From Macrostomum hystrix (Eukaryota > Animalia > Platyhelminthes), in assembly GCA_950097015.1 (NCBI GenBank), contig CATNEN010000025.1, forward strand, positions 5,394,001 through 5,458,000: a stretch of DNA of 64,000 nucleotides, written 5' to 3'. The position numbers and the translations under genes are program-made. How positions within the stretch are numbered: the first letter of the stretch is position 1; each line of letters opens with the position of its first letter. The notes below the pieces were generated by a model. It saw only the letters and a program-made list of their open reading frames with translations, searched no databases and was not told where the DNA came from. This document shows, piece by piece, positions 2,840-38,531 of this stretch.

Positions 2840-3104
2840 CCATTAAATCCTATAGACAACATTCAGGTTTCAACAGGACTGCTTCTCTGATGCGTTGAAT
2901 TTCACTACAAAAATGCTGAATTTTTTCACACAGAAGTGAGAACGAAAGACTTCTTTCTAAATTCTCGTGTATTTGCATCGGTCCGTCTCTTGCCTTTCAG
3001 ATTTTTTTCAACTTCTACTTCTCTCTTCCCCTCAATCTAACCCTGAAGATGATAACCAAATAACGGCAAATTGAATCTTAATTGCTGTCCCTTTCGAGGC
3101 TTAA

Positions 3105-4035
3105 CACTATCCCTCCTCTCTCCCTCCTCTATCTCCTCCTATCTCTCTACCCTCCTCTCTCCCCACACACTCTCCCCAGCTCTCGCTTCCCTCCTCTCTC
3201 TCCCCTCCTCTCTCTCCCCTCCTCACTCTCCCCTCCTCTCTCTCCCCTCCTCACTCTCTCCTCCTCTCTCCCCTCCCCACTCTCTCCCTCCTCTCTATCC
3301 CCTCCCCACTCTCTCCCTCCTCTCTCTCCTCCTCTCTCTCCCTCCCCACTCTCTCCTCCTCTCTCTCTCCTCCTCTCTCTCCCCTCCTCTCTCTCCCCTC
3401 CTCTCTCTCCTCCTCTCTCTCCCTCCCCACTCTCTCCTCCTCTCTCTCTCCTCCTCTCTCTCCTCCTCTCTCTCCCCTCCTCTCTCTCTCCTCCTCTCTC
3501 TCCCCTCCTCTCTCTCTCCTCCTCTCTCTCCCCTCCTCTCTCTCCTCCTCTCTCTCCCTCCCCACTCTCTCCTCCTCTCTCTCTCCTCCTCTCTCTCCCT
3601 CCCCACTCTCTCCTCCTCTCTCTCTCCTCCTCTCTCTCTCCTCCTCTCTCTCCCCTCCACTCTCTCTCCTCCTCTCTCTCCCCTCCTCTCTCTCTCCTCC
3701 TCTCTCTCCCCTCCTCTCTCTCCTCCTCTCTCTCCCTCCCCACTCTCTCCTCCTCTCTCTCTCCTCCTCTCTCTCCCTCCCCACTCTCTCCTCCTCTCTC
3801 TCCCCTCCTCTCTCTCTCCTCCTCTCTCTCCCCTCCTCTCTCTCTCCTCTTCTCTCTCCTCTCCTCTCTCTCTCCTCCTCTCTCTCCCCTCCTCTCTCTC
3901 TCCTCCTCTCTCTCCCCTCCTCTCTCTCTCCTCCTCTCTCTCCCCTCCCCACTCTCTCCCTCCTCTCTCTCCCCTCTTGTCTCTCCTCCTTTCTCTCCCT
4001 CCCCACTCTCCCTCTCCTCTCTCACCTCCTCTCTT
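3105..4035. repeat. CT-rich low-complexity polypyrimidine tract
   Basis: Runs of CTCT/CTCC; the ORFs predicted here are repeat artefacts. Confidence 0.95.
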
Positions 4036-4599
4036 ACAGAATTGATTACTAAGATCACAAAGCTTGCTTAACAGATTAAACCAAAGAATTAGACGAATGA
4101 ATCGATTCATAAATTAATAACGATACACGAACAAATGCTAAAACAACACGCGCCCACGCAGGTGCAAAAGCAAATTTACGCTAAAGAGCTCTTTTTTGAT
4201 AAGCTTATGTTTCAGGCCATCTGCCATTTTTATGTTATTGTATTTCGTTCTTTTCGAATTTATTTTTGATAAATTATACCGACTAATTAGCATAATAACA
4301 TTATTAATTATATAAAACTGTAGGTCTAGTTGGGTTTTCAATCGCGGCCCAAGCATTCTACTCGTACTAAAGAATGTTTCATTGATGACGCTTGCACAAC
4401 TCACACAGATGCTTTTAAGGGTTGTTTTTTATATATTCGGCATTCGGAAAAGTCAAGGAATGGGGCATGATTTATTGCCATTCGGAATCTGGCTTGCTGT
4501 CTGTTGCAAAGTCTCGAACTATTGATTCTGAGTGAGTTCCCTATTCTGTCATTTCATTGAATTGAGAATTATTTGCATACTGTGCCGTATTGCCTTTCT

Positions 4600-5270
4600 T
4601 CCTTCAGTTCTCTACTTTGCCTTCCTCCCTTCCCTCCACTTCCCCTTCATCTCTCTCTTCCTCTCTCCCCTCCTCCCTCCCTTCCTCTCTCCCTTCCTCT
4701 CTCCCTTCCTCTCTCTTCCTGCCTTCTCTCCACTTCCCCTTCCTCTGTCCCTTCCTCTCTCCCTTCCTCTCTCCCTTCCTCTCTCCTCTCCTCTCTCCCT
4801 TCCTCTCTCCCTTCCTCTCTACCTTCCTCTATATCTCTTCGTCTCTCCCTTCCTCCCTTCCCTCCACTCCCCCTTCCTCTCTCTCTTCCTCTCTCCCTTA
4901 CACTCTTCCTGTCTTTTTCTCTCCCTTCCTCTCACCCTTTCTCTCACACCCTTCCTCTCACCCTTCCTCTCACACCCTTCCTCTCACACCCTTCCTCTCA
5001 CACCCTTCCTCTCTCACCCTTCCTCTCACCCTTCTTCTCTCACCCTTCCTCTCTCACCCTTCCTCTCACACCCTTCCTCTCTCACCCTTCCTCTCTCACC
5101 CTTCCTCTCTCACCCTTCCTCTCTCACCCTTCCTCTCACACCCTTCCTCTCACACCCTTCCTCTCACCTTTCCTTTCTTTCCCTTCCACTCTCGCTTCCT
5201 TTCTCCTTCTTTCTCCTTCCTCTGTCTCCCTTCTTCTGTCCACTTTCCTCTCCTCTTTCCTTTTTTGTCC
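4600..5270. repeat. CT-rich simple repeat (CCCTTCCTCTCT / CCCTTCCTCTCACA units)
   Basis: Tandem 12-14-bp pyrimidine units. Confidence 0.9.
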
Positions 5271-5859
5271 CAGTTTCCTAAGCTACAATTTTTAGTTTTA
5301 TGCTGTTTAGAGTTCGAATTAAAAGTGTCGGGCACAGCAACCAAATCACACTTTACCAATCTAGTCTAGCTAGTCTGAAAGTCGATAAGCGTCACTTATC
5401 TTAAAAGTATTTCCGTTTTAAATTGCTTTGAAAGTCTTCCGAAGCCCTGTTCAAATTTCCTAAATGAAAGACGCCGTCTTTGAAAGACGTGTCAAGTGGC
5501 TCAGATGGAGCCAGACAAACTAAGGAGTGAATTCAAGTGACAAATTGTTTTACGAGTAGAAAAACAAGTTTCAAGTTGCTAGACACCCTGACACCCTGAC
5601 CTAATATGAGATTATCAGCATTGGACTGCAGTAAGGTGAGACTACTGTAACCCCTAGCCAAGGTGTTGACAGTTATTTATGGCTCGTTTGTTAAAAACCA
5701 ATTTCAATTTAAGAATGTCGAGATTTAAAACTAAATTCTAGGAAACGGAATGGAAAAGAATCCGAATTTTCTGAAAATGTGAATTTTCGGGTAAGGGGGG
5801 TTCATTTCGGAAAAGCAAAATTCAGTAAAGGTAAAATTCCCCGAAAAGTAATAATAATA

Positions 5860-6122
5860 AGAAATAATTGATTACACCTGCCCCAATTGGGCCAGATGTG
5901 CAGCCGACAGCACAGCCGCAGCTATTGCGCGGCGCATCTGAAGACTGTGTACAGCTGTTCAGTCCATGGACTGGGGGGACGCCACACCCAACCTTCAATT
6001 ATCCCAGCTGATGCTGGTACCCATTTAACAGCTGGGTGACCCAAATTGTTCCAGTGGAGTCGGGAATCGAACCCCCGACCTTCAAGTCGTGAGTCCGACA
6101 CCCTAACCACTAGGCTACAACC
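5860..6122 (-). mobile_element. tRNA-derived SINE family A, copy 1 (CORE partly deleted)
   Basis: Minus strand starts GGTTGTAGCCTAGTGGTTAG (A box) ... GGTTCGATTCCC (B box). Body has CACCCAGCTGTTAAATGGGTACC and CCCCCCAGTCCATGGACTGAAC, then a TTA-rich tail. Homologous copies lie near 10.1-10.6, 25.9-26.6, 38.5-38.8 and 63.0-63.2 kb. Confidence 0.85.
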
Positions 6123-6249
6123 TCTCCGAAAAGTAAAATTCTGAAAAGCGAAATTTCTGGACAGAGAGATTTCGGAAAATGAAAAAATATGTAAAAGGTA
6201 AATTCGGGAAAAACTAAATTCTAGAAAACGAAAATTTTGGGAAAATGAA

Positions 6250-7545
6250 AATTCGTTAGTAGAAAAATTCGGGAAAGGGAAAATTCGGGAAAGGGAAAAT
6301 TCGGAAAGGGAAAATTCGGAAAGGGAAAATTCGGGAAAGGGAAAATTCGGAAAGGGAAAATTCGGGAAAGGGAAAATTCGAGAAAGGGAAGATTCGGGAA
6401 AGGGAAAATTCGGGAAAGGGAAAATTCGGGAAAGGGAAAATTCGGGAAAGGGAAGATTCGGGAAAGGGAAAATTCGGGAAAGGGAAAATTTAAAAGGGAA
6501 AATTCGAGAAAGGGAACATTCGGGAAAGGGAAAATTTGGGAAAGGGAAAATTCGGGAAAGGGAAAATTCGAGAAAGGGAACATTCGGGAAATAGGAAAAA
6601 TCGGGAAAGGGAAGATTGGGGAAAGGGAAAATTTGGGAAAGGGAAAATTCGGGAAAGGGAAAATTTGGGAAAAGGAAAATTCGGGAAAGGGAAAATTCGG
6701 GAAAGGGAAAATTTGGGAAAGGGAAAAGTCGGGAAAGGGAAAATTCGGGAAAGGGAAAATTTGGGAAAAGGAAAATTTGGGAAAGGGAAAATTCGAGAAA
6801 GGGAACATTCGGGAAAGGGAAGATTGGGGAAAGGGAAAATTTGGGAAAGGGAAAATTTGGGAAAGGGAAGATTGGGGAAAGGGAAAATTTGGGAAAGGGA
6901 AAATTCGGGAAAGGGAAGATTGGGGAAAGGGAAAATTTGGGAAAGGGAAAATTCGGGAAAGGGAAAATTTGGGAAAGGGAAAATTCGGGAAATAGGAAAA
7001 ATCGGGAAAAGGAAAATTTGGGAAAGGGAAAATTTGGGAAAGTGAAAATTCGGGAAAGGGAAGATTGGGGAAAGGGAAAATTTGGGAAAGGGAAAATTCG
7101 GGAAAGGGAAAATTCGGGAAAGGGAAAATTTGGGAAAGGGAAAATTCGGGAAATAGGAAAAATCGGGAAAAGGAAAATTTGGGAAAGGGAAAATTCGGTA
7201 AAGGGAAAATCAGGAAAGGGAAAATTTGGGAAAGGGAAAATTCGGGAAAGGGAAAATTTGGGAAAGGGAAAATTCGGGAAATAGGAAAAATCGGGAAAAG
7301 GAAAATTTGGGAAAGGGAAAATTTGGGAAAGGGAAAATTTGGGAAAGGGAAAATTCGGGAAAGGGAAGATTGGGGAAAGGGAAAATTTGGGAAAGGGAAA
7401 ATTCGGGAAAGGGAAAATTCGGGAAAGGGAAAATTTGGGAAAGGGAAAATTCGGGAAATAGGAAAAATCGGGAAAAGGAAAATTTGGGAAAGGGAAAATT
7501 CGGTAAAGGGAAAATCAGGAAAGGGAAAAATTGGTACAAGAAGCA
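6250..7545. repeat. 16-bp minisatellite (GGGAAAGGGAAAATT[C/T])n
   Basis: About 80 units with variant sub-blocks. Confidence 0.95.
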
Positions 7546-7546
7546 T

Positions 7547-9690
7547 TTGGGAAAATCGAGATAGGAAAAATTCATGAAAGGGGAACATTTAGGAAAGACA
7601 AAAATGATAAAAAGTGATATTTAAAATGTTGAAAAACGAATTTTGATTAAAAAGGAATTGTTTGTGATAGTCTTAAATTTAGTTTTACTGGCATATGAGC
7701 ATGACTAGTTCCAATCGGCTAGAAAATTTGATTTGCATCATCGAAATTTCAATACCATCAAGAAAGCAAGTTACGAAATTTCTGAACTGCTATTCAAGCA
7801 AGTGCACTTTGGAGAATGAACTGCCAGCCAGCCTGTCTGCTGTTCAATCCTCCAAAAAAGACTCAAGTTGAAAAGGCTTGCCCGACTAGACAGACAGATA
7901 TGGAGAGCCAATCAAGCTTCATGACAAGCAAATTAGAATGCTAATATAGGGACCAGGATCCCGTCCTGCTAGACCAGACTAGGGGACAACCCCATCGTTA
8001 TTGTCCCCAATCCAAGCAGCGCCATTCTCTTAAAGAACTCAGCTCACTTGTCATTCACGACCTGTCAGTTAGTCAGTCACATGCAAACATCTTCCTGCTG
8101 CACTCATGCACGATAATAGTCATCCGATTCTCTTCACATTCGCTTTTTTAGCACTGTGGCCTGTTTGTAGGCTATGCGCCTCCCTTCCTCCTCAAGCTTT
8201 TCCTCATCTCCATTTCTTTCTCGCTAACTCTCTACCTCTCCCCCATTCTCCCTTCCATTCTCCCTTCCTCTCTATCCCCTCCTCTCCGATTCTCACTTTC
8301 TCTCTCGATTCCTCTCTCCCTTCCTCCTTTCCTCTCTCCCTTCCTCTCTCTCTTCCTCTTTCTCTTCCCCTCTCCCTTCCTCTCTCCCTTCCTCTCTCCC
8401 TTCCTCCTTTCCTCTCTCCCTTCCTCTCTCCCTTCCTCCTTTCCTCTCTCCCTTCCTCTCTCTCTTCCTCTTTCTCTTCCCCTCTCCCTTCCTCTCTCCC
8501 TTCCTCTCTCCATTCCTCCTTTCCTCTCTTGGAAATTTGGAAAAATCGAGATAGGAAAAATTCATGAAAGGGGAACATTTAGGAAAGACAAAAATGATAA
8601 AAAGTGATATTTAAAATGTTGAAAAACGAATTTTGATTAAAAAGGAATTGTTTGTGATAGTCTTAAATTTAGTTTTACTGGCATATGAGCATGACTAGTT
8701 CCAATCGGCTAGAAAATTTGATTTGCATCATCGAAATTTCAATACCATCAAGAAAGCAAGTTACGAAATTTCTGAACTGCTATTCAAGCAAGTGCACTTT
8801 GGAGAATGAACTGCCAGCCAGCCTGTCTGCTGTTCAATCCTCCAAAAAAGACTCAAGTTGAAAAGGCTTGCCCGACTAGACAGACAGATATGGAGAGCCA
8901 ATCAAGCTTCATGACAAGCAAATTAGAATGCTAATATAGGGACCAGGATCCCGTCCTGCTAGACCAGACTAGGGGACAACCCCATCGTTATTGTCCCCAA
9001 TCCAAGCAGCGCCATTCTCTTAAAGAACTCAGCTCACTTGTCATTCACGACCTGTCAGTTAGTCAGTCACATGCAAACATCTTCCTGCTGCACTCATGCA
9101 CGATAATAGTCATCCGATTCTCTTCACATTCGCTTTTTTAGCACTGTGGCCTGTTTGTAGGCTATGCGCCTCCCTTCCTCCTCAAGCTTTTCCTCATCTC
9201 CATTTCTTTCTCGCTAACTCTCTACCTACCTCTCCCCCATTCTCCCTTCCATTCTCCCTTCCTCTCTATCCCCTCCTCTCCGATTCTCACTTTCTCTCTC
9301 GATTCCTCTCTCCCTTCCTCCTTTCCTCTCTCCCTTCCTCTCTCTCTTCCTCTCTCTCTCTTCCCCTCTCCCTTCCTCTCTCCCTTCCTCTCTCCATTCC
9401 TCCTTTCCTCTCTCCCTTCCTCTCTCCCTTCCTCCTTTCCTCTCTCCCTTCCTCTCTCCCTTCCTCCTTTCCTCTCTCCCTTCCTCTCTCCCTTCCCCTC
9501 TCTCTTCCTCTCTCCCTTCCTCTCTCCCTTCCTCCCTTCCTCTCTCCCTTCCTCCTTTCCTCTTTCCCTTCCTCTCTCTCTTCCTCTCTCCCTTCCTCCC
9601 TTCCTCTCTCCCTTCCTCCCTTCCTCTCTCCCTTCCTCTCTCCCTTCCTCCCTCCTTTCTTCTCTGTCTCCTATCATCTCTCCCTTCCTC
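7547..9690. repeat. 990-bp-period tandem segmental duplication (unique segment plus CT tract)
   Basis: 7561 ATAGGAAAAATTCATG matches 8551. About 690 bp of unique sequence (7547-8236 vs 8537-9226) looks essentially identical by eye; each copy is followed by a CT-rich tract. Confidence 0.9.
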
Positions 9691-10074
9691 TAAACGTCTA
9701 AAATCATCGCAGCGATATAAAACTGACAGAGAAGGCAGCACGAATTTTAGTCTCATTCTTTGTCATTTTTATAGTGAAATTGTGATTTAAGCAAATGTTC
9801 TGACATTTTTTGTTGAGTGTCAGTTTTCTGACGCAAGCTAATTTACGAGCGATTTGAGTACAAAAATAACATGTATTACCTTGAGATTAAACAACGTTTC
9901 TATGAAAGTCGTCCTGGTGAAGGTATGCGTTTTTTCTAGAAAATCTCTTTTTAGATTAAAAAATAATAGTTTTCTACGAAACTTTAGCACGCTTTTTTCT
10001 TTGTCAAAAATTCTAAAAGAGTGTTTCCTTTTCCTAGCTTAAACAGTTTAAAGTTTTTATAATTTTTGTAAATA

Positions 10075-10590
10075 AAATTAGGCCAGATCAGCAGACAGCA
10101 GACAGCAGACAGCAGACAGCAGACAGCAGACAGCAGACAGCAGAAAGCAGACAGCAGACAGCAGACAGCAGACAGCAGACAGCAGACAGCAGACAGCAGA
10201 CAGCAGACAGCAGACAGCAGAAAGCAGACAGCAGACAGCAGACAGCAGACAGCAGACAGCAGACAGCAGACAGCAGACAGCAGACAGCAGACAGCAGAAA
10301 GCAGACAGCAGACAGCAGACAGCAGACAGCAGACAGCAGACAGCAGACAGCAGACAGCAGACAGCCGCGGCCATTGCGCCGCGCATCTGAAGGCTGCGTA
10401 CGGCTGTTCAGTCCATGGACTGGGGGGACGCCACACCCACCTTCAATTAATTCTGGCTCCTATTTAACTGTGAACTGAAGCGATGCAGAGTTAAGTGACT
10501 TTCTTAATGACAAAAATTATTCCAGTAGTGTCGGGAATCGAACCCCCGACCTTCAAGTCGTGAGTCAGACTCACTAACCGCTAGGCTACA
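10075..10590 (-). mobile_element. SINE family A, copy 2, with an internal (AGACAGC)n expansion
   Basis: tRNA head at 10530-10590 (plus strand TCGGGAATCGAACCCCCGACC), body AGTCCATGGACT, and the 3' part GGCCAGAT resumes at 10081 on the far side of the heptamer array. Confidence 0.8.
10088..10365. repeat. Heptamer repeat (AGACAGC)n
   Basis: About 39 near-perfect units with occasional AGAAAGC variants. Confidence 0.95.
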
Positions 10591-11214
10591 AAAGGTTTCA
10601 GACTGGACAAGAAAAGTTATTTTGGAGACATAATTTTCACGAGACTGAAAGCAGATGGCCCAGTTGACTCAATCCTCAATTGATTTTTTTAAATCTGCGA
10701 TTATCCATTTAAATTAGCTTTTTCTCTCAAATTTCGCTGCAGATTTATAAGATCAATCGACGATCTCGATCCTAAGTGTCCGTTTTGGGAGATTTCGAGA
10801 ATTTCTCAATTTGTTTGACTTGGGAATTTCTTTTTGGGGCCGCAGCTGGATTGACCAAGGAAGGGAGAAATTCCCCTGAGAATGGTAGTTGGGACCAAAA
10901 AAAGTTTATTTGCCCATTCTCTCTTTGGTCTGAGTATCTTAATGTTGCGCCGTATCGACATCGGTGGGTTAAGATGGGATTTCGGGACGCGTGGGGGGGG
11001 AAGGGGTTTAATCCCTATTCCGCCAGAGCTGATGATTCCAGCTGATGCTTCTGAAAGAAACAAGCAGAAATGTTAGAAGTAAAAGTCTCTGGATGAGAGC
11101 TTCGGAATGTGGCAAGGGGTAGAACGAAATAATGAGGTGGTGGGATATTGAGATCAGGATTAAAATGAAGAAATACATACAATAAATTCAGGGGGAGAGA
11201 AGCCGAGACGTAAG

Positions 11215-12025
11215 AATGGGTAAGAATGACGTTCAGGGGTAAGAAAGATATACATGGGGTAAGAAAGACGTACAGGGGTACGAAAGACGTACAGGGGTAA
11301 GAAAGACGTACAGGGGTAAGAAAGACGTACAGGGGTAAGAAAGACGTACAGGGGTAAGAAAGACGTTCAGGGGTAAGAAAGACGTTCAGGGGTAAGAAAG
11401 ACGTACAGGGGTAAGAAAGACGTTCAGGGGTAAGAAAGACGTTCAGGGGTAAGAAAGACGTTCAGGGGTAAGAAAGACGTTCAGGGTAAGAAAGACGTTC
11501 AGGGGTAAGAAAGACGTTCAGGGGTAAGAAAGACGTACAGGGGTAAGAAAGACGTTCAGGGGTAAGAAAGACGTTCAGGGGTAAGAAAGACGTACAGGGG
11601 TAAGAAAGACGTTCAGGGGTAAGAAAGACGTTTCAAGGGTAAGAAAGACGTTCAGGGGTAAGAAAGACGTACAGGGGTAAGAAAGACGTTCAGGGGTAAG
11701 AAAGACGTTCAGGGGTAAGAAAGACGTTCAGGGGTAAGAAAGACGTTCAGGGTAAGAAAGACGTTCAGGGGTAAGAAAGACGTTCAGGGGTAAGAAAGAC
11801 GTACAGGGGTAAGAAAGACGTTCAGGGGTAAGAAAGACGTTCAGGGGTAAGAAAGACGTACAGGGGTAAGAAAGACGTTCAGGGGTAAGAAAGACGTTCA
11901 GGGGTAAGAAAGACGTTCAGGGGTAAGAAAGACGTACAGGGGTAAGAAAGACGTACAGGGGTAAGAAAGACGTTCAGGGGTAAGAAAGACTTTCAGGGGT
12001 AAGAAAGACGTACAGGGGTAAGAAT
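11215..12025. repeat. 19-bp minisatellite (AGGGGTAAGAAAGACGT[A/T]C)n
   Basis: About 42 units. Confidence 0.95.
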
Positions 12026-17061: not shown

Positions 17062-31285
<14,224 letters not shown>

Positions 31286-31946
31286 GATTTAGTGGGATAG
31301 ATGTACTATTATCAGTTTATGGTGTTTCATCTAGCGCCGACAGGGCGACAGGGCATATCCTCCCCGCAGACTTTTATATTTGTGCCGTCCTCTTAACCAA
31401 TCGCTGCGGTTTGTAGATTTCAGGACCCACTGAACTGAGATTTCCTAGCCAACCAATGGCTATCTGAGAGGAGCACTTGCGATTCGCCTCAACGATAATA
31501 CACTTCTCAATGGGCCTTGTTGTTAAAACGAATTCCCCAAAGGACTGGGGCGCGGATCAGTTTCGAAAAACTCTACCGCTGAATTTTAAGATATATTTAA
31601 CCGAATTTATTTAAAAATTTACAGCGATTCGATTTAGATTATTTTATACGGATATCAAACATAGAAATTAGTAAATTATTAGTAAATAAGTAAATAAATG
31701 GATAATAAATATTTTAATAAAAAAATTAAATAATATAAAAGCTTGCAGTTTGTGAGCAAAGAGCAAAAGTGACAATTCAGCCATTAGTACTCATAGGCAA
31801 TAAAATATATTAAGTCAGTAGGAAAAAAGCGTAAAAAATGGAATATTTGAGCAGCTGAGCACTGCTCACCAGCCCTCTTAAGCTCAGGCAGCTATATTTG
31901 AGTTTTATTTTGGTTTTCTTTCAGGGCCATAGGTGTCAGAGACTGC

Positions 31947-34886
31947 TCAACCCTGGATTTGGAGTCGGTTCTGCCTGTTGATTTGTCCCCGCCTCAGGGT
32001 AGCCCACAGGACATTGAGGATGGGGACACGGCCCGGAGCGCGAGGCAGCTCCGGCTCGATGTGGAAGCCGTGCAGCCGAGCTGCTCTCATCTTGAGCAGC
32101 CAGGCCACACCGAGCTGTTTGACTCTGGCCGAGAGCATTGGCATGCCGGCCAGTTTGTGAAGGTACTCGGTGCTCAGGTAGGAAGGCACACCGTAGCAGA
32201 TTCGCAGAGCAAGGTTCTGGATCTTTTGTAGCTTGATCTGATTGGTGACGCAGATCAGAGTCAAGATTGGGGCGCCGTAGGTGAGAGCGCTCTCACCGTA
32301 GGCCCTGTACAGCATTCTGAGAGTGACGCTGCTCAGTTTGGTGATCTTGGCGATGCGGCACAGGGACATGACAATGGCCCTGCACGTATTCGCCATGTTG
32401 TCGACGTGTTTATTCAGGCAAAGATTGGCGTCGAGGAGGACACCTAGAAATTTTACTTCCTGACAGTAGGGGACCACCGTCTGCCCCAGCTGCAGTTTGG
32501 GTCGCAAGTCGGCGCGAGCTGTCGGCTTGTAGTTGAAGGCGATGGCCTTGCTCTTGTCGGCATTCAGTCTGATGCCTTGCTTTCCGCACCACTCCCAGAC
32601 TTGTCTGAGGTAGCTCTGGAGGCATGTCCGCAGACCAGCAAAGGTGTCTGCGGAGGCCCAGATGGCCATGTCGTCAGCAAATTGACTGCGTTTCACGTTT
32701 GGATTTTCAGGAATCGGCATTGTGCTGACGTACAGCAGGTACAGGAGAGGACTCAAGATGCCTCCCTGAGGTACGCCAGCTAGGATTCTGATCAGCTCAC
32801 TGAGCGAGTTGTTGACTCGCACCTGGATGTACCTGTTCCTGAGGTAGTCAGACAGGATGCGCGTCAGCATCGAAGGAAAGCCAGCGTTGAGCATGCGGCT
32901 CCTGAGCATGTCGTGCCAGGCAGAGTCAAAGGCCGCCTCTACATCAAGGAAGACTGCAGCGGCCCTCTTTGTTTTGCACTTTGCGACCATCATGTCCTGC
33001 ACCAGTCGGCACAGGTTGTCGTAGGTGGAGTGGACTTTGCGATAAGCGCATTGGTCATCGCCAAGAATGTTCTTGTCTTCAAGGTATTTGGAGAGTCTCT
33101 TGGCAATCAGCTTCTCAAACACCTTGCCTAAGCAAGAGGTCAGGCTGATTGGCCTGTACGAGTTTGGATTGTCTGGCGGTTTGTCAGGCTTCGGGATCAT
33201 TGTCACCACAGCTTTCTTCCAAGCGCTGGGGAAGATCCCTTGACTGAAGCAGGCGTTAAAGAGTCTGGTGATCCTGGTGATCGCCACGCCTTCAAGGCCG
33301 AGTTTGAGCACTCGATTGGGAATCTTATCCAGCCCGGGTGCTCCATCAGGCTTGAGGTGCTCAAGCTCCCACACTGTGTCGGCTACAGTGAATGCGGCTT
33401 CAAGCGGGTGAGTGGCTATGCCATTGATGTCGGCCGGAATCGGATAGAAAGCGATGAACTTGGCCACTTCGGCCACCTCCTGTTTGAGCTGGTCACAAGT
33501 TGATGGGACTGGGCGCATCTTTGAGTCCTGAGTGGCAGCGAGAAGGTTCGCTTTCTCCAGATCAGTGTGCGCACTGGTTTGACCCGAAGTGAGGGTTGGA
33601 ATGGAGCTGGGCTTGAACTTGCCCATCAGCTTCCTGGTGTCATGCCAGAAGTTCTTGACCTTGCTGTTCTTGCTGTTCTCGACAACATTCTCACACAGCT
33701 TGGTGAGCTTGCCGCTCTGGAAGGAAGTGATTTCCCTTTTGATCCTGTTGGCCATTTGGTTGGCCAGCCTTTTAAAGTTTTCATCCCCGGTGCTGTTGAA
33801 GAGTCGTCTGAGTCGTCGGCGCTCTTTGATCAGCTCAAGGATGTGCTTGGGCAGAGCATTTCGGCCACCACAGTCTGGCACAGTCGACTCAATGACCGTG
33901 TGGATGGCTTTTGTGATGAGCTCGACCTCGGCGTCGATTTGCTGAGCACTCGATAGGCGAGTCGGCTGGTCAGGAAGAAGGGCTTCACTAATTCTCAGCC
34001 TGAACTGATCCCAGTCGGTTTTGGAAAAGTTTTTCGGCTTAGCGGGACCTGCCCACTTTGCCGACTGAATGTTGAGGGTGAGGATGATTGGCAGGTGGTC
34101 GCTGTCCAGGTCAGGACCGACTGCAAAGTCCTGCACAAAGGGCAGAAAGTCCTCCGTGGCCAGGCCGAGGTCCAAGACATTCCTGGAAGTGACGCCATTC
34201 TTGGTGGCGATTCTGGTGAACTGGCCAACTTGATTGAGGATGGTGGGCGAGGTCGGACCTTCAGAGAGCCAGTCGTACAGCTCATGGCCAGCCTTGTTGT
34301 TGCTGCTGTCACCGCCAAGGAAGCGGTGTCTGGCATTGAGGTCGCCAAGGAGAACACTGCGTCTGCGCGAGACCAGGCTCTTGAGTAGGTTCAGGTTCAG
34401 GTGGTAAGGTGCCGGAGACCTGTACACCAGAGCCAGATTAAAGTCGGCACCGTGAGAGTTGTCAGACAGGCTGACGGTGCAGGAGATGGCTTCATGGTTC
34501 ACGTTGTCGTAGTGCAAGCGAACATTGGTGAGTTTGACGCGCGGTGAGTGAGCAAGGAGCAAGCCGCGTCTGACATGCGGAGTGTCGTATCGGATGATGG
34601 AGTAGCCAGGGATCTGGACCGTGTGCGAACTCTTGAGAATGGTTTCAGAGAAGAGAGCAATGTCTATCTCTTGACTAATGACCCATTGGGTGAGTTCTCT
34701 GCTTTTCGGGTGAAACCCTCTGCAGTTGAGGTGCATAATTTTCAGACCCGTTGTCTGGGTAATGGGGTTCCCATTTAAATTAAGGAATTTCCAGTTTTCT
34801 GGTTTAGCTGCCTGGGCCCACGACCCCGGTGGCGGCGGAGGCCATGCCAGACACGTCCTGGAGGACAGCCCGCACAATGTCCTCAA
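31947..34886 (-). CDS. LINE ORF2: AP-like endonuclease plus reverse transcriptase
   Basis: APE motifs: LKIMHLNCRG, FSET, LLGDLNARH, NVLDL, DSDHLPI. RT motifs: PGLDKIP, SYRPISLTSCLGKVFEK, FLDVEAAFD, GVPQGGILSPLLY, QFADD, FLGVLLD. No stops. The frame opens at 34904; the first ATG (34736) lies inside the first APE strand. Confidence 0.95.
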   Translation of the reverse strand: MRTLCGLSSRTCLAWPPPPPGSWAQAAKPENWKFLNLNGNPITQTTGLKIMHLNCRGFHPKSRELTQWVISQEIDIALFSETILKSSHTVQIPGYSIIRYDTPHVRRGLLLAHSPRVKLTNVRLHYDNVNHEAISCTVSLSDNSHGADFNLALVYRSPAPYHLNLNLLKSLVSRRRSVLLGDLNARHRFLGGDSSNNKAGHELYDWLSEGPTSPTILNQVGQFTRIATKNGVTSRNVLDLGLATEDFLPFVQDFAVGPDLDSDHLPIILTLNIQSAKWAGPAKPKNFSKTDWDQFRLRISEALLPDQPTRLSSAQQIDAEVELITKAIHTVIESTVPDCGGRNALPKHILELIKERRRLRRLFNSTGDENFKRLANQMANRIKREITSFQSGKLTKLCENVVENSKNSKVKNFWHDTRKLMGKFKPSSIPTLTSGQTSAHTDLEKANLLAATQDSKMRPVPSTCDQLKQEVAEVAKFIAFYPIPADINGIATHPLEAAFTVADTVWELEHLKPDGAPGLDKIPNRVLKLGLEGVAITRITRLFNACFSQGIFPSAWKKAVVTMIPKPDKPPDNPNSYRPISLTSCLGKVFEKLIAKRLSKYLEDKNILGDDQCAYRKVHSTYDNLCRLVQDMMVAKCKTKRAAAVFLDVEAAFDSAWHDMLRSRMLNAGFPSMLTRILSDYLRNRYIQVRVNNSLSELIRILAGVPQGGILSPLLYLLYVSTMPIPENPNVKRSQFADDMAIWASADTFAGLRTCLQSYLRQVWEWCGKQGIRLNADKSKAIAFNYKPTARADLRPKLQLGQTVVPYCQEVKFLGVLLDANLCLNKHVDNMANTCRAIVMSLCRIAKITKLSSVTLRMLYRAYGESALTYGAPILTLICVTNQIKLQKIQNLALRICYGVPSYLSTEYLHKLAGMPMLSARVKQLGVAWLLKMRAARLHGFHIEPELPRAPGRVPILNVLWATLRRGQINRQNRLQIQG

Positions 34887-37485
34887 CCATTTTACTGGTC
34901 GATTCTACCGTGAGGAGCTCACCAGGCGGTCTGGACAGGGCCCGCACAATCACCTGGGTCAGAGAGCGGGTGAACAGGGGCAACAGCATGCTCACCATCT
35001 GCTTCAAGTCAGTTTGCTGCTGCTGCTGCTGTGGCTCACTGCCAGCGTCCAGGGAGGGTGCAGCCTCATTGGCGCTCGTGCACCTGGCGCTGACAGTCTC
35101 GGCGGCCGGTCGGCTCCTGGCATCATCGGTGCTGATGAACAGCGGCCGGATGGCGGCATTGACGGGCACGTTGCGGCGGCCTTGGCGCATCAGCCAGCCA
35201 CTGTCCGAAGCGTCGGACACGTCGGCGGGCGCACTCGAGGCAGGCGGGGCATCCGTAGGCGCGGCTTCCGCTGCTCGCGCCGCAGCAGCTTTGGCCTCAG
35301 CTGCCGCCTTCGTCGCCTTGGCGTGCTCCTCCTGCGCAACAGTGCAGGCTCGGCTGGTCGTGCGGTGCTGACCACCGCAGTTGGAGCATGTCGCCGGGCC
35401 TTCGTGCTGGCAGTCCTTCCAGGCATGCGAGCCGCCGCAGATTCGGCATCGCAGCTCCGCCTGGCACTGGGCCGCACGGTGGCCGAACTGCTGGCAGCGC
35501 TGGCACTGCAGGGCGCGGATCGGCTCATCAGTGCGGCTCTCCTCACAGGCGAACCTCACAAAGTCAGTGCAGATTCCGTCACGGAGGCACTGCTCGACGG
35601 TTGCACGCGACCTCGTGAAGACGCGCATGAACCGGGTGGCCTGTCCGGACGCCTTGGCTCGAATTCGCTGGACACTAGTAATGTCCAGCTTGAGGCTGTC
35701 CCGTAGCATTGTTGCGAACTCAGCATCCGTGATGGAGAGCGGAACTTCCAGTGCAACAAATGTCTGCACACGCTGCTGTTGGACTCTGTCAGCGCCAGTC
35801 CGGTTGTCCAGCGGTCTCGATCGGGCTGGACGACGCTCGACACTGTGGCCGAGGAGGCTGTCGTGACGCAGAGCACCGCCTAGGAAGACGTTGTAATCCC
35901 GCTCAGTGGCCGGGAATACTAGGTAGGCGGGCTGATTGGCCATTTCGGCTGTGTTGATGGCACGGGCATCGCCGGCAAAGTTGGCCTGAAGCCAGGTGAT
36001 GAAGGCCACCAGCTTGCTTGCCGCACTCTGATGGACCTCGAAGACCACCGGTGGAATGGCAGCCTGGGGTCTCTTAGGAGGTGCGCGAGCCGAAGCCACT
36101 TGCGCATAGGGCCGCGCCGTCGCAGCCTGGGTCGTTGAAGCCGTCGCCGCTACCGCTGCCGCCGACGCCGCCGACGAACCCGTCACCGCGTTCGCCGACG
36201 CTGCCGCCGCACCCGCCGCTGCACCCCGGCCGCCGCCGCCACCTCGCGTGCCTCGCTGTCTGCCGCCGCCGCCACCGCGGCTGCCTCGCTGCTGACCGCC
36301 GCCGCCGCTCTGACCACGTGCGCCGCGCTGACCACCGCCGCCGCGCTCTGCCTGCTGGTCTTGGGGTTGGCCTGGGTTGCCTTGCCGGTCGCCGAAGGGA
36401 CCGCAGTCCAGTGGCTGGCTGTAGGTTGGGTCGTCGGTCGCCGCCCTCTTGCGCCGCAGCTCCGGCTTGGTGACGCGGAATGTCAGCGAGATCCGGACGC
36501 CGGTCTGGGTGCGAACTGCAGGCACCTGATGCTGCAGCCGCTTCTGACAGTTGCCTCCCATCAGGATCAGCGACCCAGGAAGCGTCGGAAATTTGTGCGT
36601 GACGTTGCCGTCACGTCGACGCAACATAAAAGTGCGCTCAGCGCCGAAAGAAACTGTAGCGATGGTCGGCTTGTCACCGAGCTCCCCCTCGTCATCTGCA
36701 TGCCACGGAATCCGGTCCTCTGGCTCGGTGTAGAAGTTCACCAGAACGGAGTTGAACTTCGGGACCTCGAGCCCAGCATCGTCGTAAAGGAAGTCACGAA
36801 TGTCTTCGATTACGGGATGCCAGGTTTGGTTCTCCTTCAGCTCAACCCCGCTGTAGGTGTACGCCGGGCCGATCCAGAAGACACGGCGCTGCTCGTGCGG
36901 GCGATGACGGAAGGCGAGTGGGAGCACGTCTTCTATCAGGCGCTGGTAGATCTGGTCGGCGACCTCGCCAAGAAAGTAGGGCGCATAGACGATGTTGCAG
37001 TCACCCGCGTAGCTCGTCTTCTGACACTCGCTGAAGTCCGGCTCGTCAGGGAAGACGATTTGAGACACATCAGCCTCGGACTGTACAGCGGTGGGCTTTG
37101 GGATAGTTGTTAGGGCACTTGCCATATCAGATGCCGTTGGCGCTGGCGCAGGTGCTGCCGCAGCCACGGTCTGTTGGGCAACCGTCTCGGCTGCCTCGGC
37201 TTCATCAACGGACATTTCGTTTAATTCAGCGGTCGCGGGGGCCGCAGTCCCTGCTGGAGGCTCGTCTTCGACGATGACAAGCCGACCATCTGGCGGGCTG
37301 AGCGAGCCGCGGTCTTGGTCACAGTTGGCCGGTTCTAAAATCTCGCTGGCCGGCATCGGAGTCGACATCAGCGCTGTCGCGACCTTCGGCTGTAGCTTGC
37401 GACTGGCATCCTCAGTGCGGCCGTACCGATGCTCGAGCGAGGGGCGGCCGTCGTGTTTTTTTGCAGTGGCGCTATTCGCAGCCAT
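34804..37485 (-). CDS. LINE ORF1 (893 aa): AlkB/ALKBH2-3-like 2OG-Fe(II) dioxygenase, RGG linker and three zinc knuckles
   Basis: First ATG 37485 (the ORF-track start at 37548 is GTG). AlkB about 37000-36470: YTYSG, FNSVLVNFY, WHADDE, IATVSFGAERTF, GSLILM, QHQVP, RISLTFR. Knuckles about 35506-35345: CQRCQQFGHRAAQC, CRICGGSHAWKDC, CSNCGGQHRTTSRAC. Confidence 0.92.
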   Translation of the reverse strand: MAANSATAKKHDGRPSLEHRYGRTEDASRKLQPKVATALMSTPMPASEILEPANCDQDRGSLSPPDGRLVIVEDEPPAGTAAPATAELNEMSVDEAEAAETVAQQTVAAAAPAPAPTASDMASALTTIPKPTAVQSEADVSQIVFPDEPDFSECQKTSYAGDCNIVYAPYFLGEVADQIYQRLIEDVLPLAFRHRPHEQRRVFWIGPAYTYSGVELKENQTWHPVIEDIRDFLYDDAGLEVPKFNSVLVNFYTEPEDRIPWHADDEGELGDKPTIATVSFGAERTFMLRRRDGNVTHKFPTLPGSLILMGGNCQKRLQHQVPAVRTQTGVRISLTFRVTKPELRRKRAATDDPTYSQPLDCGPFGDRQGNPGQPQDQQAERGGGGQRGARGQSGGGGQQRGSRGGGGGRQRGTRGGGGGRGAAAGAAAASANAVTGSSAASAAAVAATASTTQAATARPYAQVASARAPPKRPQAAIPPVVFEVHQSAASKLVAFITWLQANFAGDARAINTAEMANQPAYLVFPATERDYNVFLGGALRHDSLLGHSVERRPARSRPLDNRTGADRVQQQRVQTFVALEVPLSITDAEFATMLRDSLKLDITSVQRIRAKASGQATRFMRVFTRSRATVEQCLRDGICTDFVRFACEESRTDEPIRALQCQRCQQFGHRAAQCQAELRCRICGGSHAWKDCQHEGPATCSNCGGQHRTTSRACTVAQEEHAKATKAAAEAKAAAARAAEAAPTDAPPASSAPADVSDASDSGWLMRQGRRNVPVNAAIRPLFISTDDARSRPAAETVSARCTSANEAAPSLDAGSEPQQQQQQTDLKQMVSMLLPLFTRSLTQVIVRALSRPPGELLTVESTSKMVEDIVRAVLQDVSGMASAATGVVGPGS

Positions 37486-37889
37486 GTGGTGTGATTTCTC
37501 ACTAGTGCAGTCTGGGTGAGCAAAATAAACAAAGGGGGTAGGTGGCACGCAAAGTGCGCACTCAATGGAGGGGGTGGGGTGACAACTAGACTAAAACAAC
37601 AAGGACAGGGGGAGAGAAAAACATCAAAATAAAGCTAAAGCAGTTAAGAAAATACAAAGGACACTATAGGGAGCTTACTGGTGTACTTTAAAAGTACCCC
37701 CTTCTAGGAATGGGGTTGCACAAATCAAGGAACACTCAATGAATGTACCTCTCCACGGAAATCTTTAGTAAAAGGCGAAAGATTTAAGCGTGGAATGAAG
37801 AGAAACCAGAGTTTCAATGGGCCTTAAGTGTGTAAATTAGTTTGTCCCCGTTTTGTACTCATAACAGTGTCAGTAAAAACGTTTCGATC

Positions 37890-38350
37890 TGATCTCATCT
37901 CTATCCTTATCTCATCTCTACCCAAATCGCATCTCTATCATTATCTCATCTCTACACTTATCTCATCTATCCTTATCTTATCTCTACCCTAATCTCATCT
38001 CTATCCTTATTGTAACACACTAAAAGTGAGGAACGAACCTCGCGCCGGCAGACCGAGACCGGTTTCTGGCTTGTTTGCCTTCGTCAGTCAGCCATAGCCA
38101 CACGCAGTCCTCTCCTCTCCCACCACTCTAAATGTGCACAGAAGTCTCTTTTTTAAGCTTGCCATTTTTATGGCGATACTTTATTAGTGTTATGTGAGAG
38201 TTTTGCAGCCAAGTCTTTGCTTTTCTACTGTTGTCAGTAGTCTGAATTGTATCTCTCACACTTTTCTCATCTCTACACTTATCTCATCTCTACCCTTATC
38301 GCATCTCTATATTATCTCATCTTTAGACTTATCTAATCTCTACCCTTATC
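37890..38350. repeat. Degenerate (ATCTCATCTCTATCCTT)-type repeat interrupted by a 250-bp insert
   Basis: The repeat phase continues on both sides of 38011-38260. Confidence 0.7.
38011..38260. mobile_element. Solo-LTR-like insertion (TGT...ACA) with a hammerhead-like motif
   Basis: Starts TGTAACAC and ends CTCACA. Flanked by CTTAT / CTTTT (5-bp TSD, one mismatch), which restores the host repeat phase. AATAAA on minus at 38180-38185. Confidence 0.6.
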
Positions 38351-38531
38351 TCATCTCTTCACTTATCTTTTCCCTACTGTCTCTAGACAAAAATAAGTAG
38401 CTTTTAGTCTATTTGTTAGAGCTTCTGACACCTTAATGAGAGGTTTTGAGTTCGATCTCAGCCCAAGGAAAATTTGTCCTGAACAAGGCTTATATGCTGT
38501 CGGTTTATTTATAAAAATAATATTATTACTA

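What the first reader, a model, noticed from the sequence alone, without database searches (positions are those of the whole stretch)
34804..37485. LINE ORF1 fused to a complete AlkB (ALKBH2/3-like) nucleic-acid demethylase domain
Seen: a single stop-free 893-aa ORF1 carries, N-terminal to a normal Jockey/I-type three-knuckle gag module, a domain (about 37000-36470) with all AlkB catalytic residues. These are the H-x-D iron ligands (WHADDE, His at 36702-36700), the distal His (QHQVP, 36531-36529), the 2OG-binding R-x5-R (RISLTFR), N-x-Y (FNSVLVNFY) and YTYSG. Established: ALKBH2/3 and the AlkB domains of plant RNA viruses (Flexi-/Closteroviridae) oxidatively remove 1mA/3mC lesions, and m1A/m3C block reverse transcriptases. 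ORF1p of LINEs coats its own RNA in cis, and the accessory ORF1 domains I recall being described are RRM, CCHC, PHD and esterase. Inference: the element may carry its own RNA/cDNA repair or demethylase activity into the RNP, protecting the template during TPRT or countering host methylation-based silencing. The region before the core (DVLPLAFRHRPHEQRRVFW) looks shorter than the ALKBH3 lid, which would be reminiscent of single-strand-preferring viral AlkBs. I cannot confirm from here whether AlkB-ORF1 LINEs are already catalogued.
Basis: partly seen in the sequence, partly recalled or inferred. Interest (0 to 1): 0.93.

Follow-up and report, generated by a model that had tools for sequence, protein, structure and literature searches.

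The report
LINE gag protein carrying AlkB demethylase
A full-length flatworm jumping gene (LINE) has a complete ALKBH3-type methyl-removing enzyme, kept intact by selection, built into the protein that coats its RNA. This suggests that methylated bases limit its copying, but no enzyme activity has been measured.

Summary
Window 37485..34807 (minus strand) is one stop-free 893-aa ORF1. It contains, in order:
- a disordered N-terminus;
- a complete AlkB dioxygenase (Pfam PF13532, E 1e-22; human ALKBH3, E 2.5e-25; AF2 pLDDT 91; best fold match ALKBH3);
- an RGG-rich linker;
- two RRM-like domains;
- three CCHC knuckles.

ORF2 (APE + RT) follows.

The fusion is not a one-off:
- Macrostomum lignano carries at least five copies of the same family at three loci.
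- Four distant LINE families (25-34% ORF1 identity) from public assemblies have the same layout.
- An AlkB ORF also sits upstream of a Penelope-like RT/GIY-YIG ORF.

All catalytic and substrate-contact residues are identical in the 15 retroelement AlkB domains that cover them and in vertebrate ALKBH3; one copy has a single Tyr-to-His change in the YTYSG motif. dN/dS for the AlkB core is 0.15, the same as for the RRMs.

The family targets loop 1 of U5 snRNA genes. The window copy is an off-target insertion of a whole U5-LINE read-through transcript, flanked by a 12-nt target-site duplication.

The function is inferred, not shown: removal of m1A/m3C-type methyl groups from the element's single-stranded RNA or cDNA. 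I found no paper describing AlkB in a LINE. This scan had already noted the same fusion on other pieces of this genome.

The parts
37814..37825 (-). 5' copy of the 12-nt target-site duplication (AAGGCCCATTGA). It ends immediately before the first base of U5.
   Evidence: It is the only shared 12-mer between the two flanks; 6 of 20000 shuffles give one.
37696..37814 (-). Complete U5 snRNA sequence forming the 5' end of the retro-copied unit. The Rfam match includes base 37814, which is also the last base of the duplication, so the element proper starts at 37813.
   Evidence: Rfam RF00020, 82.6 bits, model 1-117/117. Homology to the M. lignano copies starts exactly at the U5 5' end. There is no M. 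lignano-type U5 upstream block here.
37486..37695 (-). 5' UTR between U5 and the ORF1 start codon.
34804..37485 (-). ORF1, 893 aa plus stop: AlkB-gag fusion protein.
36451..37023 (-). AlkB (ALKBH3-type Fe(II)/2OG dioxygenase) domain, about aa 155-345. Key residues are R200, Y209, Y211, N250, Y252, H262, D264, D265, H319, R331 and R337.
   Evidence: Pfam E 1e-22; ALKBH3 E 2.5e-25; AF2 pLDDT 91; Foldseek ALKBH3 E 3e-17; dN/dS 0.15; conserved residues.
36076..36450 (-). Low-complexity linker, RGG/Gly-rich then Ala/Ser-rich, about aa 346-470.
   Evidence: It is not alignable between families.
35827..36051 (-). RRM-like domain 1, about aa 479-553.
   Evidence: AF2 model, pLDDT above 90; Foldseek hits to tandem-RRM proteins.
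35539..35766 (-). RRM-like domain 2, about aa 574-649.
   Evidence: dN/dS for the region covering both RRMs is 0.15.
35344..35505 (-). Three CCHC zinc knuckles (aa 661-674, 680-692, 700-714).
   Evidence: They are conserved in four distant families.
31947..34886 (-). ORF2, 979 codons. The APE endonuclease is at about aa 51-268 and the RT at about aa 564-816. ORF2 overlaps the end of ORF1 by 83 nt in another frame, and its first ATG is codon 51.
31519..31946 (-). 3' UTR ending in the family's conserved terminus (...TTTTAACAAC), with no poly(A).
31507..31518 (-). 3' copy of the 12-nt target-site duplication.

Best explanation
Window 37813..31519 (minus strand) is a full-length non-LTR retrotransposon with both reading frames open. 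It belongs to a family that in Macrostomum flatworms inserts into loop 1 of U5 snRNA genes and is transcribed as a U5-LINE read-through RNA. This copy is an off-target insertion of such an RNA, flanked by a 12-nt duplication.

Its ORF1 protein contains a complete ALKBH3-type Fe(II)/2-oxoglutarate dioxygenase, followed by an RGG linker, two RRMs and three CCHC knuckles.

Most likely (inferred) the enzyme is loaded in cis onto the element's own RNA with the rest of ORF1p. There it would oxidatively remove N1-methyladenine/N3-methylcytosine-type methyl groups from single-stranded RNA, and possibly from the cDNA or the exposed target strand. These groups would otherwise stall the ORF2 reverse transcriptase. 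They could be alkylation damage or marks added by the host.

Shown here: the domain, its completeness, its ALKBH3 kinship, its presence in several retroelement families, and purifying selection on it. Inferred: the activity, the substrate and the benefit to the element.

My confidence that this is a real, selected, catalytically competent AlkB domain in a LINE ORF1p is about 0.9. My confidence in the template-demethylation role is about 0.5. The overall figure given is a compromise between the two.
For: Domain identity:
- Pfam PF13532, E 1e-22.
- Human ALKBH3 E 2.5e-25, ALKBH2 1e-17; E. coli AlkB does not appear at E<=0.01.
- AF2 pLDDT 91. Foldseek ranks ALKBH3 first (E 3e-17, TM 0.75-0.81), then ALKBH2, with E. 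coli AlkB and ALKBH5/6/8 far behind.

Residues: the Fe ligands, the 2OG arginines, N-x-Y, R200 (aligned with the Arg of ALKBH3's PRLTAWYG strand) and D265 are identical in the 15 retroelement copies that cover them and in vole ALKBH3; one further copy, P0154, has His for Y211.

Selection, window copy against the M. lignano copies: dN/dS for the AlkB core is 0.15 (bootstrap 0.09-0.25). The RRM region is 0.15, the knuckles 0.18, the C-terminal tail 0.41 and ORF2 about 0.11.

Recurrence:
- Copies of the same family lie at three M. lignano loci (L011-L013).
- Four distant families have AlkB + RRM + 3 knuckles. For L001, L003, L004 and L008 an APE-RT ORF2 follows directly.

Tree: all retroelement AlkBs form one clade (support 87/59) inside an ALKBH3-like group that also holds the metazoan ALKBH3s.

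Element anatomy.

Precedent for a retrotransposon-encoded AlkB-family demethylase with measured activity: an orchid Ty3/Gypsy element (PMC9289625).

From established knowledge, not tested here: ALKBH3 prefers single-stranded DNA/RNA carrying m1A or m3C; these lesions block reverse transcriptases; LINE ORF1p binds its own RNA in cis.
Against: - No biochemical, expression or read-level evidence was obtained.
- Substrate specificity cannot be read from sequence alone. AlkB-family members act on m6A, tRNA bases and other targets.
- The single-origin clade of retroelement AlkBs has only moderate support (87/59).
- The organism behind the four distant families is unknown, so the taxonomic breadth of the fusion is unclear.
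- Most LINEs manage without such a domain, so the selective benefit may be specific to this host or to snRNA-type transcripts.
Confidence: 0.6

Rival explanations
1. The domain is an epitranscriptomic counter-defence eraser rather than a repair enzyme. It would strip host-installed regulatory methyl marks (m1A, m6A or similar) from the LINE RNA, marks that would otherwise trigger decay, silencing or poor translation.
For: The orchid Gypsy AlkB protein demethylates m6A in vitro, and its authors read it as escape from epitranscriptomic control (PMC9289625). m6A writers and erasers modulate L1 activity in mammals (PMC7873242). The same conservation data fit this reading.
Against: The domain groups with ALKBH3/ALKBH2, not with ALKBH5 or FTO, by sequence, fold and tree. 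Nothing is known here about RNA marks in this host. This reading overlaps the best explanation and differs only in where the methyl group comes from.
Confidence: 0.2
2. The enzyme works on DNA at the integration site. It would clean methyl lesions from the single-stranded target strand or from the first-strand cDNA at heavily transcribed U5 genes, so that priming and second-strand synthesis can proceed.
For: ALKBH3 and ALKBH2 are DNA repair enzymes, and ALKBH3 prefers ssDNA (established knowledge; PDB titles). The family is tied to highly transcribed snRNA genes.
Against: AlkB is fused to the RNA-binding ORF1p, not to ORF2p, which is the protein that engages the target. AlkB is also present in families with no detected snRNA association, and beside a Penelope-like RT.
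Confidence: 0.1
3. The domain serves only as an extra nucleic-acid-binding or chaperone module, and its catalysis is irrelevant.
For: AlkB folds bind single-stranded nucleic acids. ORF1p function depends on RNA binding and chaperone activity.
Against: The metal and 2OG ligands are not needed for binding, yet they are invariant in every copy that covers them, across families only 25-34% identical overall.
Confidence: 0.05
4. The fusion is an artefact: a misassembly, a one-off exon capture, or a host ALKBH3 gene misread as part of a transposon.
For: None found. The full-length protein search was blank at first.
Against: One continuous ORF lies inside an element bounded by a target-site duplication. 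The same layout occurs in independent assemblies: M. lignano GCA_002269645.1 at three contigs, and Logan assemblies of several runs.
Confidence: 0.01

Closest known systems
Human ALKBH3 (PDB 2IUW, 8JNR, 8JNK, 9NCZ)
   Same: It is the best sequence and fold match, at 31-33% identity. The H-x-D...H triad, R-x5-R, N-x-Y, the substrate-contact Arg and Asp, and the double-stranded beta-helix with its N-terminal lid are all shared. It falls in the same tree group.
   Different: Here the domain is not a free repair enzyme. It is an internal domain of a retrotransposon RNA-coating protein. Its hairpin before the YTYS strand is about 6 residues shorter, and a later loop about 9 residues shorter. Its activity is untested.
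AlkB domains in replicases of plant RNA viruses (Flexiviridae, Closteroviridae and others)
   Same: A selfish genetic element with an RNA stage carries its own AlkB. The fold is shared: Foldseek against BFVD gives E 1e-10 to 1e-12 to grapevine leafroll-associated virus, vitivirus and little cherry virus replicases.
   Different: Identity to those replicase domains is only about 20-22%, lower than to ALKBH3. There the domain sits inside the replicase polyprotein, not the RNA-coating protein. No viral sequences were placed in my tree.
Orchid (Phalaenopsis) Ty3/Gypsy elements with an ALKBH5-like ORF (PMC9289625)
   Same: A retrotransposon encodes an AlkB-family demethylase. RNA binding and demethylase activity were shown there, and the same host-versus-transposon reading was proposed.
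   Different: That is an LTR element in plants, with a separate extra ORF, of ALKBH5 type acting on m6A, and recently acquired. Here it is a non-LTR element in an animal, with the domain fused into ORF1p, of ALKBH3 type, and spread over several diverged families.
Type I LINE ORF1 proteins (RRM plus CCHC knuckles, as in the I, Jockey, R1, LOA and Tad groups)
   Same: Two RRM-like domains followed by three CCHC knuckles, upstream of an APE-RT ORF2.
   Different: An enzymatic AlkB domain and an RGG linker are added N-terminally. As far as I know, the accessory domains described for ORF1p are PHD, esterase and coiled coil. The RT clade was not resolved here.
Sequence-specific LINEs of small-RNA genes (Keno in U2 snRNA genes; a Tx1-clade family listed with U5 as target; R1/R2 in rDNA)
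   Same: Copies insert at one position of a multicopy RNA gene and are co-transcribed with it (PMC4494074). All five M. lignano 3' junctions examined lie at U5 loop 1.
   Different: ORF2 here shows no L1/Tx1-type C-terminal Cys motif, and its ORF1 is the knuckle type, so it is probably a different lineage (not tested by a tree). The insertion regenerates a complete U5 upstream. The window copy itself is off-target.

Membership tests
AlkB / ALKBH3-type Fe(II)/2-oxoglutarate dioxygenases | Sequence match to the family profile above the curated threshold | tested here: met
   PF13532 scores 81.7 bits against a cut-off of 31.2, E 1e-22. ALKBH3 chains match at E 2.5e-25.
AlkB / ALKBH3-type Fe(II)/2-oxoglutarate dioxygenases | Iron-binding H-x-D...H triad | tested here: met
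   H262, D264 and H319 are present, and conserved in every retroelement copy that covers them.
AlkB / ALKBH3-type Fe(II)/2-oxoglutarate dioxygenases | 2-oxoglutarate ligands (R-x5-R and N-x-Y) | tested here: met
   R331, R337, N250 and Y252 are present and conserved.
AlkB / ALKBH3-type Fe(II)/2-oxoglutarate dioxygenases | Double-stranded beta-helix fold with an N-terminal nucleotide-recognition lid | tested here: met
   AF2 pLDDT 91, pTM 0.87. Foldseek aligns 199-216 columns to ALKBH3 with TM 0.75-0.81, normalised by target.
AlkB / ALKBH3-type Fe(II)/2-oxoglutarate dioxygenases | Placement in the ALKBH3 branch rather than with bacterial AlkB or ALKBH5/FTO | tested here: met
   The quick tree has a 36-row clade holding the ALKBH3s with SH-aLRT 97. 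The careful tree separates it from the bacterial outgroup at 81/87. Support is moderate, and no ALKBH2, ALKBH5 or FTO reference rows were in the tree.
AlkB / ALKBH3-type Fe(II)/2-oxoglutarate dioxygenases | Oxidative demethylation of m1A/m3C in single-stranded nucleic acid | not testable with these tools
   Needs an enzyme assay.
APE-type non-LTR retrotransposon (LINE) | ORF2 with an apurinic-like endonuclease and a reverse transcriptase | tested here: met
   Exo_endo_phos_2 E 1.8e-11 and RVT_1 E 1.9e-34. The RT matches L1 ORF2p and R2 structures.
APE-type non-LTR retrotransposon (LINE) | Target-site duplication, and a defined 3' terminus shared by copies | tested here: met
   A 12-nt duplication (6 of 20000 shuffles give one). 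The same 3' terminus occurs in the window and in five M. lignano copies.
APE-type non-LTR retrotransposon (LINE) | Assignment to a named clade (Jockey, I, R1 and others) | tested here: inconclusive
   The ORF1 type fits the I/Jockey/R1 group. No reference RT sequences were available for a tree, and the PDB and Atlas hits are generic.
U5-snRNA-gene-specific LINE family | Independent copies joined to the same position of the target gene | tested here: met
   All five M. lignano 3' junctions examined, on three contigs, abut U5 loop 1. A complete or partial U5 lies directly upstream of the copies.
U5-snRNA-gene-specific LINE family | The window copy itself sits in a U5 gene | tested here: not met
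   The 3' flank is not U5. The whole U5 lies inside the duplicated-site boundaries, and the upstream block shared by M. lignano U5 genes is absent. This copy is an off-target insertion by a member of the family.

The most novel reading that the evidence does not exclude
An ALKBH3-type demethylase is a module that has moved between unrelated retroelement classes: several LINE families and a Penelope-like element. This would imply that methylation of single-stranded retroelement RNA or cDNA, whether damage or a host-installed mark, is a real and so far unrecognised barrier to reverse transcription in these animals. A more speculative extension is that the link with Sm-class snRNA-type transcripts (U5 here; spliced-leader genes according to an earlier, untested note of this scan) means the enzyme deals with methyl groups acquired through the snRNA maturation pathway.
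Probability: 0.25. Interest if true: 0.85.

Novelty: new variant of a known kind. Interest (0 to 1): 0.72.

Why it matters
LINE ORF1 proteins are regarded as RNA-binding chaperones, and enzymatic accessory domains in them are rare. A selected ALKBH3-type demethylase inside ORF1p, recurring in several retroelement families, points to base methylation of the template as a constraint on retrotransposition.

It offers a directly testable system. M. lignano is transgenic-tractable: transgenic lines are reported in PMC12801592.

It parallels the AlkB domains of plant RNA viruses and the orchid Gypsy demethylase, so three unrelated kinds of RNA-stage elements appear to have reached the same solution.

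The window copy adds clean structural evidence that this family is transcribed from the U5 snRNA start site. A whole U5 from its first base, together with the LINE, was copied into a non-U5 site with a duplication.

Tried and rejected
- **Full-length ORF1 in the word-indexed protein search:** no hit, probably because the low-complexity linker supplied most of the words. Restricting the search to the AlkB region, with candidate lengths still set by the whole protein, found only two unrelated methyltransferase-AlkB fusions.
- **AlkB domain alone:** mostly bacterial or unnamed AlkBs of about 200 aa, at 28-47% identity. I considered bacterial origin. I set it aside because the exhaustive search plus trees place the domain with the metazoan ALKBH3s.
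- **Metagenome scan with the ORF1 alignment:** the 80 best loci match the AlkB part only and hold no gag or ORF2, so it found no further fusions.
- **ESM Atlas with ORF1:** no usable hit.
- **Exact look-up of the window ORF1:** The closest proteins are M. lignano at 65-78% identity.
- **Read laying:** I therefore have no copy number, read-level variants or expression data.
- **RT clade:** PDB and Atlas hits are generic, so it is unresolved.
- **No second copy** of the element lies in the window.
- **One-off chimera and decaying domain** were both rejected.
Full report
**Observation**

On the minus strand there is a stop-free ORF from 37548 to 34804. A 979-codon ORF2 follows at 34886..31947, overlapping ORF1 by 83 nt in another frame.

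Pfam finds 2OG-FeII_Oxy_2 (PF13532) in ORF1 at aa 202-337, with 81.7 bits against a cut-off of 31.2 and E 1e-22. In ORF2 it finds Exo_endo_phos_2, Exo_endo_phos and RVT_1. Against the PDB sequences the domain matches human ALKBH3 at E 2.5e-25 and ALKBH2 at about 1e-17. E. coli AlkB does not appear at E<=0.01.

The three knuckles are at aa 661-674, 680-692 and 700-714.

**Structure**

An AF2 model of aa 126-352, built on a 50-row alignment, has pLDDT 91 and pTM 0.87. Foldseek ranks ALKBH3 structures first (E 3e-17, target-normalised TM 0.75-0.81, 31-33% identity). ALKBH2 comes next, and E. coli AlkB and ALKBH5/6/8 are far lower.

Viral AlkB domains share the fold at lower identity. The matches to plant-virus replicases are at about 20-22% identity.

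The region between the AlkB domain and the knuckles folds as two RRM-like domains with pLDDT above 90. Its best matches are tandem-RRM proteins.

ORF1p is therefore: disordered N-terminus, AlkB, RGG/Ala-rich linker, RRM, RRM, three CCHC knuckles, tail. In other words it is a Type I LINE ORF1p with an enzyme added at the front.

**Not a one-off**

The exhaustive HMMER search of 1.84 billion representatives returned two kinds of relevant hit:
- Close relatives from Macrostomum lignano, at 65-73% identity. They are annotated only as hypothetical or 'Fe2OG dioxygenase domain-containing'.
- Four distant full-length fusions from Logan assemblies: P0005 to P0008, 757-962 aa, 25-34% identical to the window ORF1 overall.

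All four distant proteins have AlkB, the RRM region and three knuckles. In L001, L003, L004 and L008 an APE-RT ORF2 follows directly.

In M. lignano contigs L011, L012 and L013 there are at least five copies of the same family as the window copy, at about 77% nucleotide identity to it.

**Selection**

Twelve of the fifteen functional positions I checked lie in columns that are invariant across six ORF1 proteins that are otherwise 25-34% identical. I tabulated all fifteen in 17 retroelement-borne domains. In the 15 sequences that cover them they are identical to each other and to vole ALKBH3. The exceptions are P0154, which has His for Y211; P0022, a fragment that has Ser for D265; and P0003, a fragment.

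Nei-Gojobori dN/dS between the window copy and the M. lignano copies is:

| Region | dN/dS | Source |
|---|---|---|
| AlkB core, 181 codons | 0.15 (bootstrap 0.09-0.25) | |
| RRM region | 0.15 | |
| Knuckles | 0.18 | |
| C-terminal tail | 0.41 | |
| ORF2 | about 0.11 | |

The M. lignano copies are near-identical to each other, so this is in effect one comparison between two lineages.

**Origin of the domain**

In a 201-row tree the retroelement domains fall in a 36-row clade (SH-aLRT 97). That clade also holds vertebrate, crinoid and nemertean ALKBH3, and a 263-aa M. lignano protein that may be the host ALKBH3.

In a careful 45-row tree the eight LINE domains and two domains from a Penelope-like context form one clade (support 87/59). 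This is neither firmly shown nor rejected. The clade sits beside the metazoan ALKBH3s (93/94) and apart from the bacterial rows (81/87).

A single capture of an ALKBH3-like gene followed by spread among elements is the simplest reading, but it is not proven.

**The element and its target**

Rfam finds a complete U5 snRNA at 37814..37696, directly 5' of the LINE. The M. lignano loci show the following:
- A U5 sequence, complete in L011 and L012 and partial in L013, lies directly upstream of the LINE copies.
- Copies are arranged in tandem.
- All five 3' ends examined carry the same terminus and abut the same point in U5 loop 1.
- In L011, the U5 3' halves attached to the LINE 5' ends are a different sequence variant from the U5 3' half that follows the last copy.

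That last point indicates that the U5 sequence travels with the LINE RNA. The RNA would be a read-through from the U5 promoter, and the upstream U5 gene is regenerated on insertion.

The window copy differs:
- The same 3' terminus is followed by non-U5 DNA.
- A 12-nt direct repeat (37825-37814 and 31518-31507) brackets a unit that starts at the first base of U5. Only 6 of 20000 shuffles of the flanks share a 12-mer.
- The upstream block shared by two M. lignano U5 genes is absent.

I read this as an off-target insertion of a full-length U5-LINE transcript. It is direct structural evidence that the transcript starts at the U5 start site. Both ORFs are open, so the insertion is probably young, but it may lack a promoter.

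Kojima (PMC4494074) lists a Tx1-clade family with U5 as target. The ORF1 type and ORF2 C-terminus here suggest a different lineage, but I could not build an RT tree.

**Mechanism**

Shown: a complete, conserved, ALKBH3-like catalytic domain that is physically part of the RNA-coating protein.

Established knowledge, not tested here: ALKBH3 removes m1A and m3C from single-stranded DNA and RNA; these lesions block reverse transcriptases; ORF1p coats its own RNA in cis.

Inference: the enzyme keeps the template, and perhaps the cDNA or the target strand, free of such methyl groups. Whether those groups are damage or host-installed marks cannot be told from sequence.

The rivals are listed separately: an m6A/m1A eraser acting as counter-defence, a role on DNA, and binding only. 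The invariance of the metal and 2OG ligands argues against a purely structural role.

**Novelty**

Searches of about 8.4 million papers and preprints found AlkB in a retrotransposon only for orchid Ty3/Gypsy elements (PMC9289625). They found nothing for LINEs, Penelope-like elements or Macrostomum transposons. Repbase and Dfam could not be consulted.

This scan had already noted the same fusion on other pieces of this genome. Its follow-ups reached similar readings, naming U5 and spliced-leader gene association. I re-tested the U5 association and the selection claim myself. I did not test the spliced-leader claim.

**Limits**
I therefore have no copy number, variants or expression data.
Later U5 statements rest on earlier calls and on M. 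lignano loci.
- The species of the window, and of the Logan runs, is not identified.

Noticed in passing
L014:2120-7398 and L015:3134-7083 (Logan runs SRR19430222, SRR19193851): An AlkB-containing ORF (P0219, 1012 aa; P0015, 569 aa) lies directly upstream of an ORF with weak RVT_1 and GIY-YIG hits and the precomputed families DUF8422 and HTH_animal. That is a Penelope-like element layout. The first ORF shares only the AlkB domain with the LINE ORF1s (no RRM, no knuckles). In the tree its AlkB groups with the LINE AlkBs. The organisms are unknown.
   Followed up: partly
L011:1123-12203, L012:9666-21132, L013:9071-16200 (M. lignano GCA_002269645.1): Tandem arrays of the form U5, LINE, U5 3' part, LINE, U5 3' part. 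One copy (L011, first copy) has an internal ORF1 deletion of about aa 206-837. The U5 halves attached to the LINEs are a different variant from the target's own 3' half. The insertion regenerates a complete U5 upstream, which can then be hit again.
   Followed up: partly
window 34804-34886: ORF2 overlaps the end of ORF1 by 83 nt in another frame, and its first ATG is codon 51. Codons 31-50, which lie after the ORF1 stop, are conserved as protein against M. lignano. This hints at a frameshift or a non-AUG start rather than initiation at Met51.
   Followed up: no
window 29610-30879: A 20-bp tandem repeat of about 64 copies, 93% matches. It produces the long repetitive ORFs listed at 30407-31285. 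A CCAAT-like and a TATA-like sequence lie just 3' of the LINE, at about 31380-31450.
   Followed up: no
window 37892-38010 and 38251-38368: Two blocks of a 17/34-bp minisatellite flank a GC-rich segment of about 100 nt (roughly 38030-38140), just upstream of the insertion site. The Rfam E-value scan of 37500-38300 found nothing there except U5.
   Followed up: partly
window 6055-6124 (minus strand): A borderline tRNA match: 29.4 bits against a gathering score of 29.
   Followed up: no
window 2001-12000: Alternating 2-kb blocks of very strong GC and AT skew (plus or minus 0.3-0.5), suggesting strand-biased satellite arrays.
   Followed up: no
M. lignano proteins P0220 (490 aa), P0222 (526 aa), P0221 (1309 aa); Asterias amurensis P0143 (795 aa): Further long proteins carry an ALKBH3-like domain and no other Pfam domain. 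It is unknown whether they are host genes or other mobile-element fusions.
   Followed up: no
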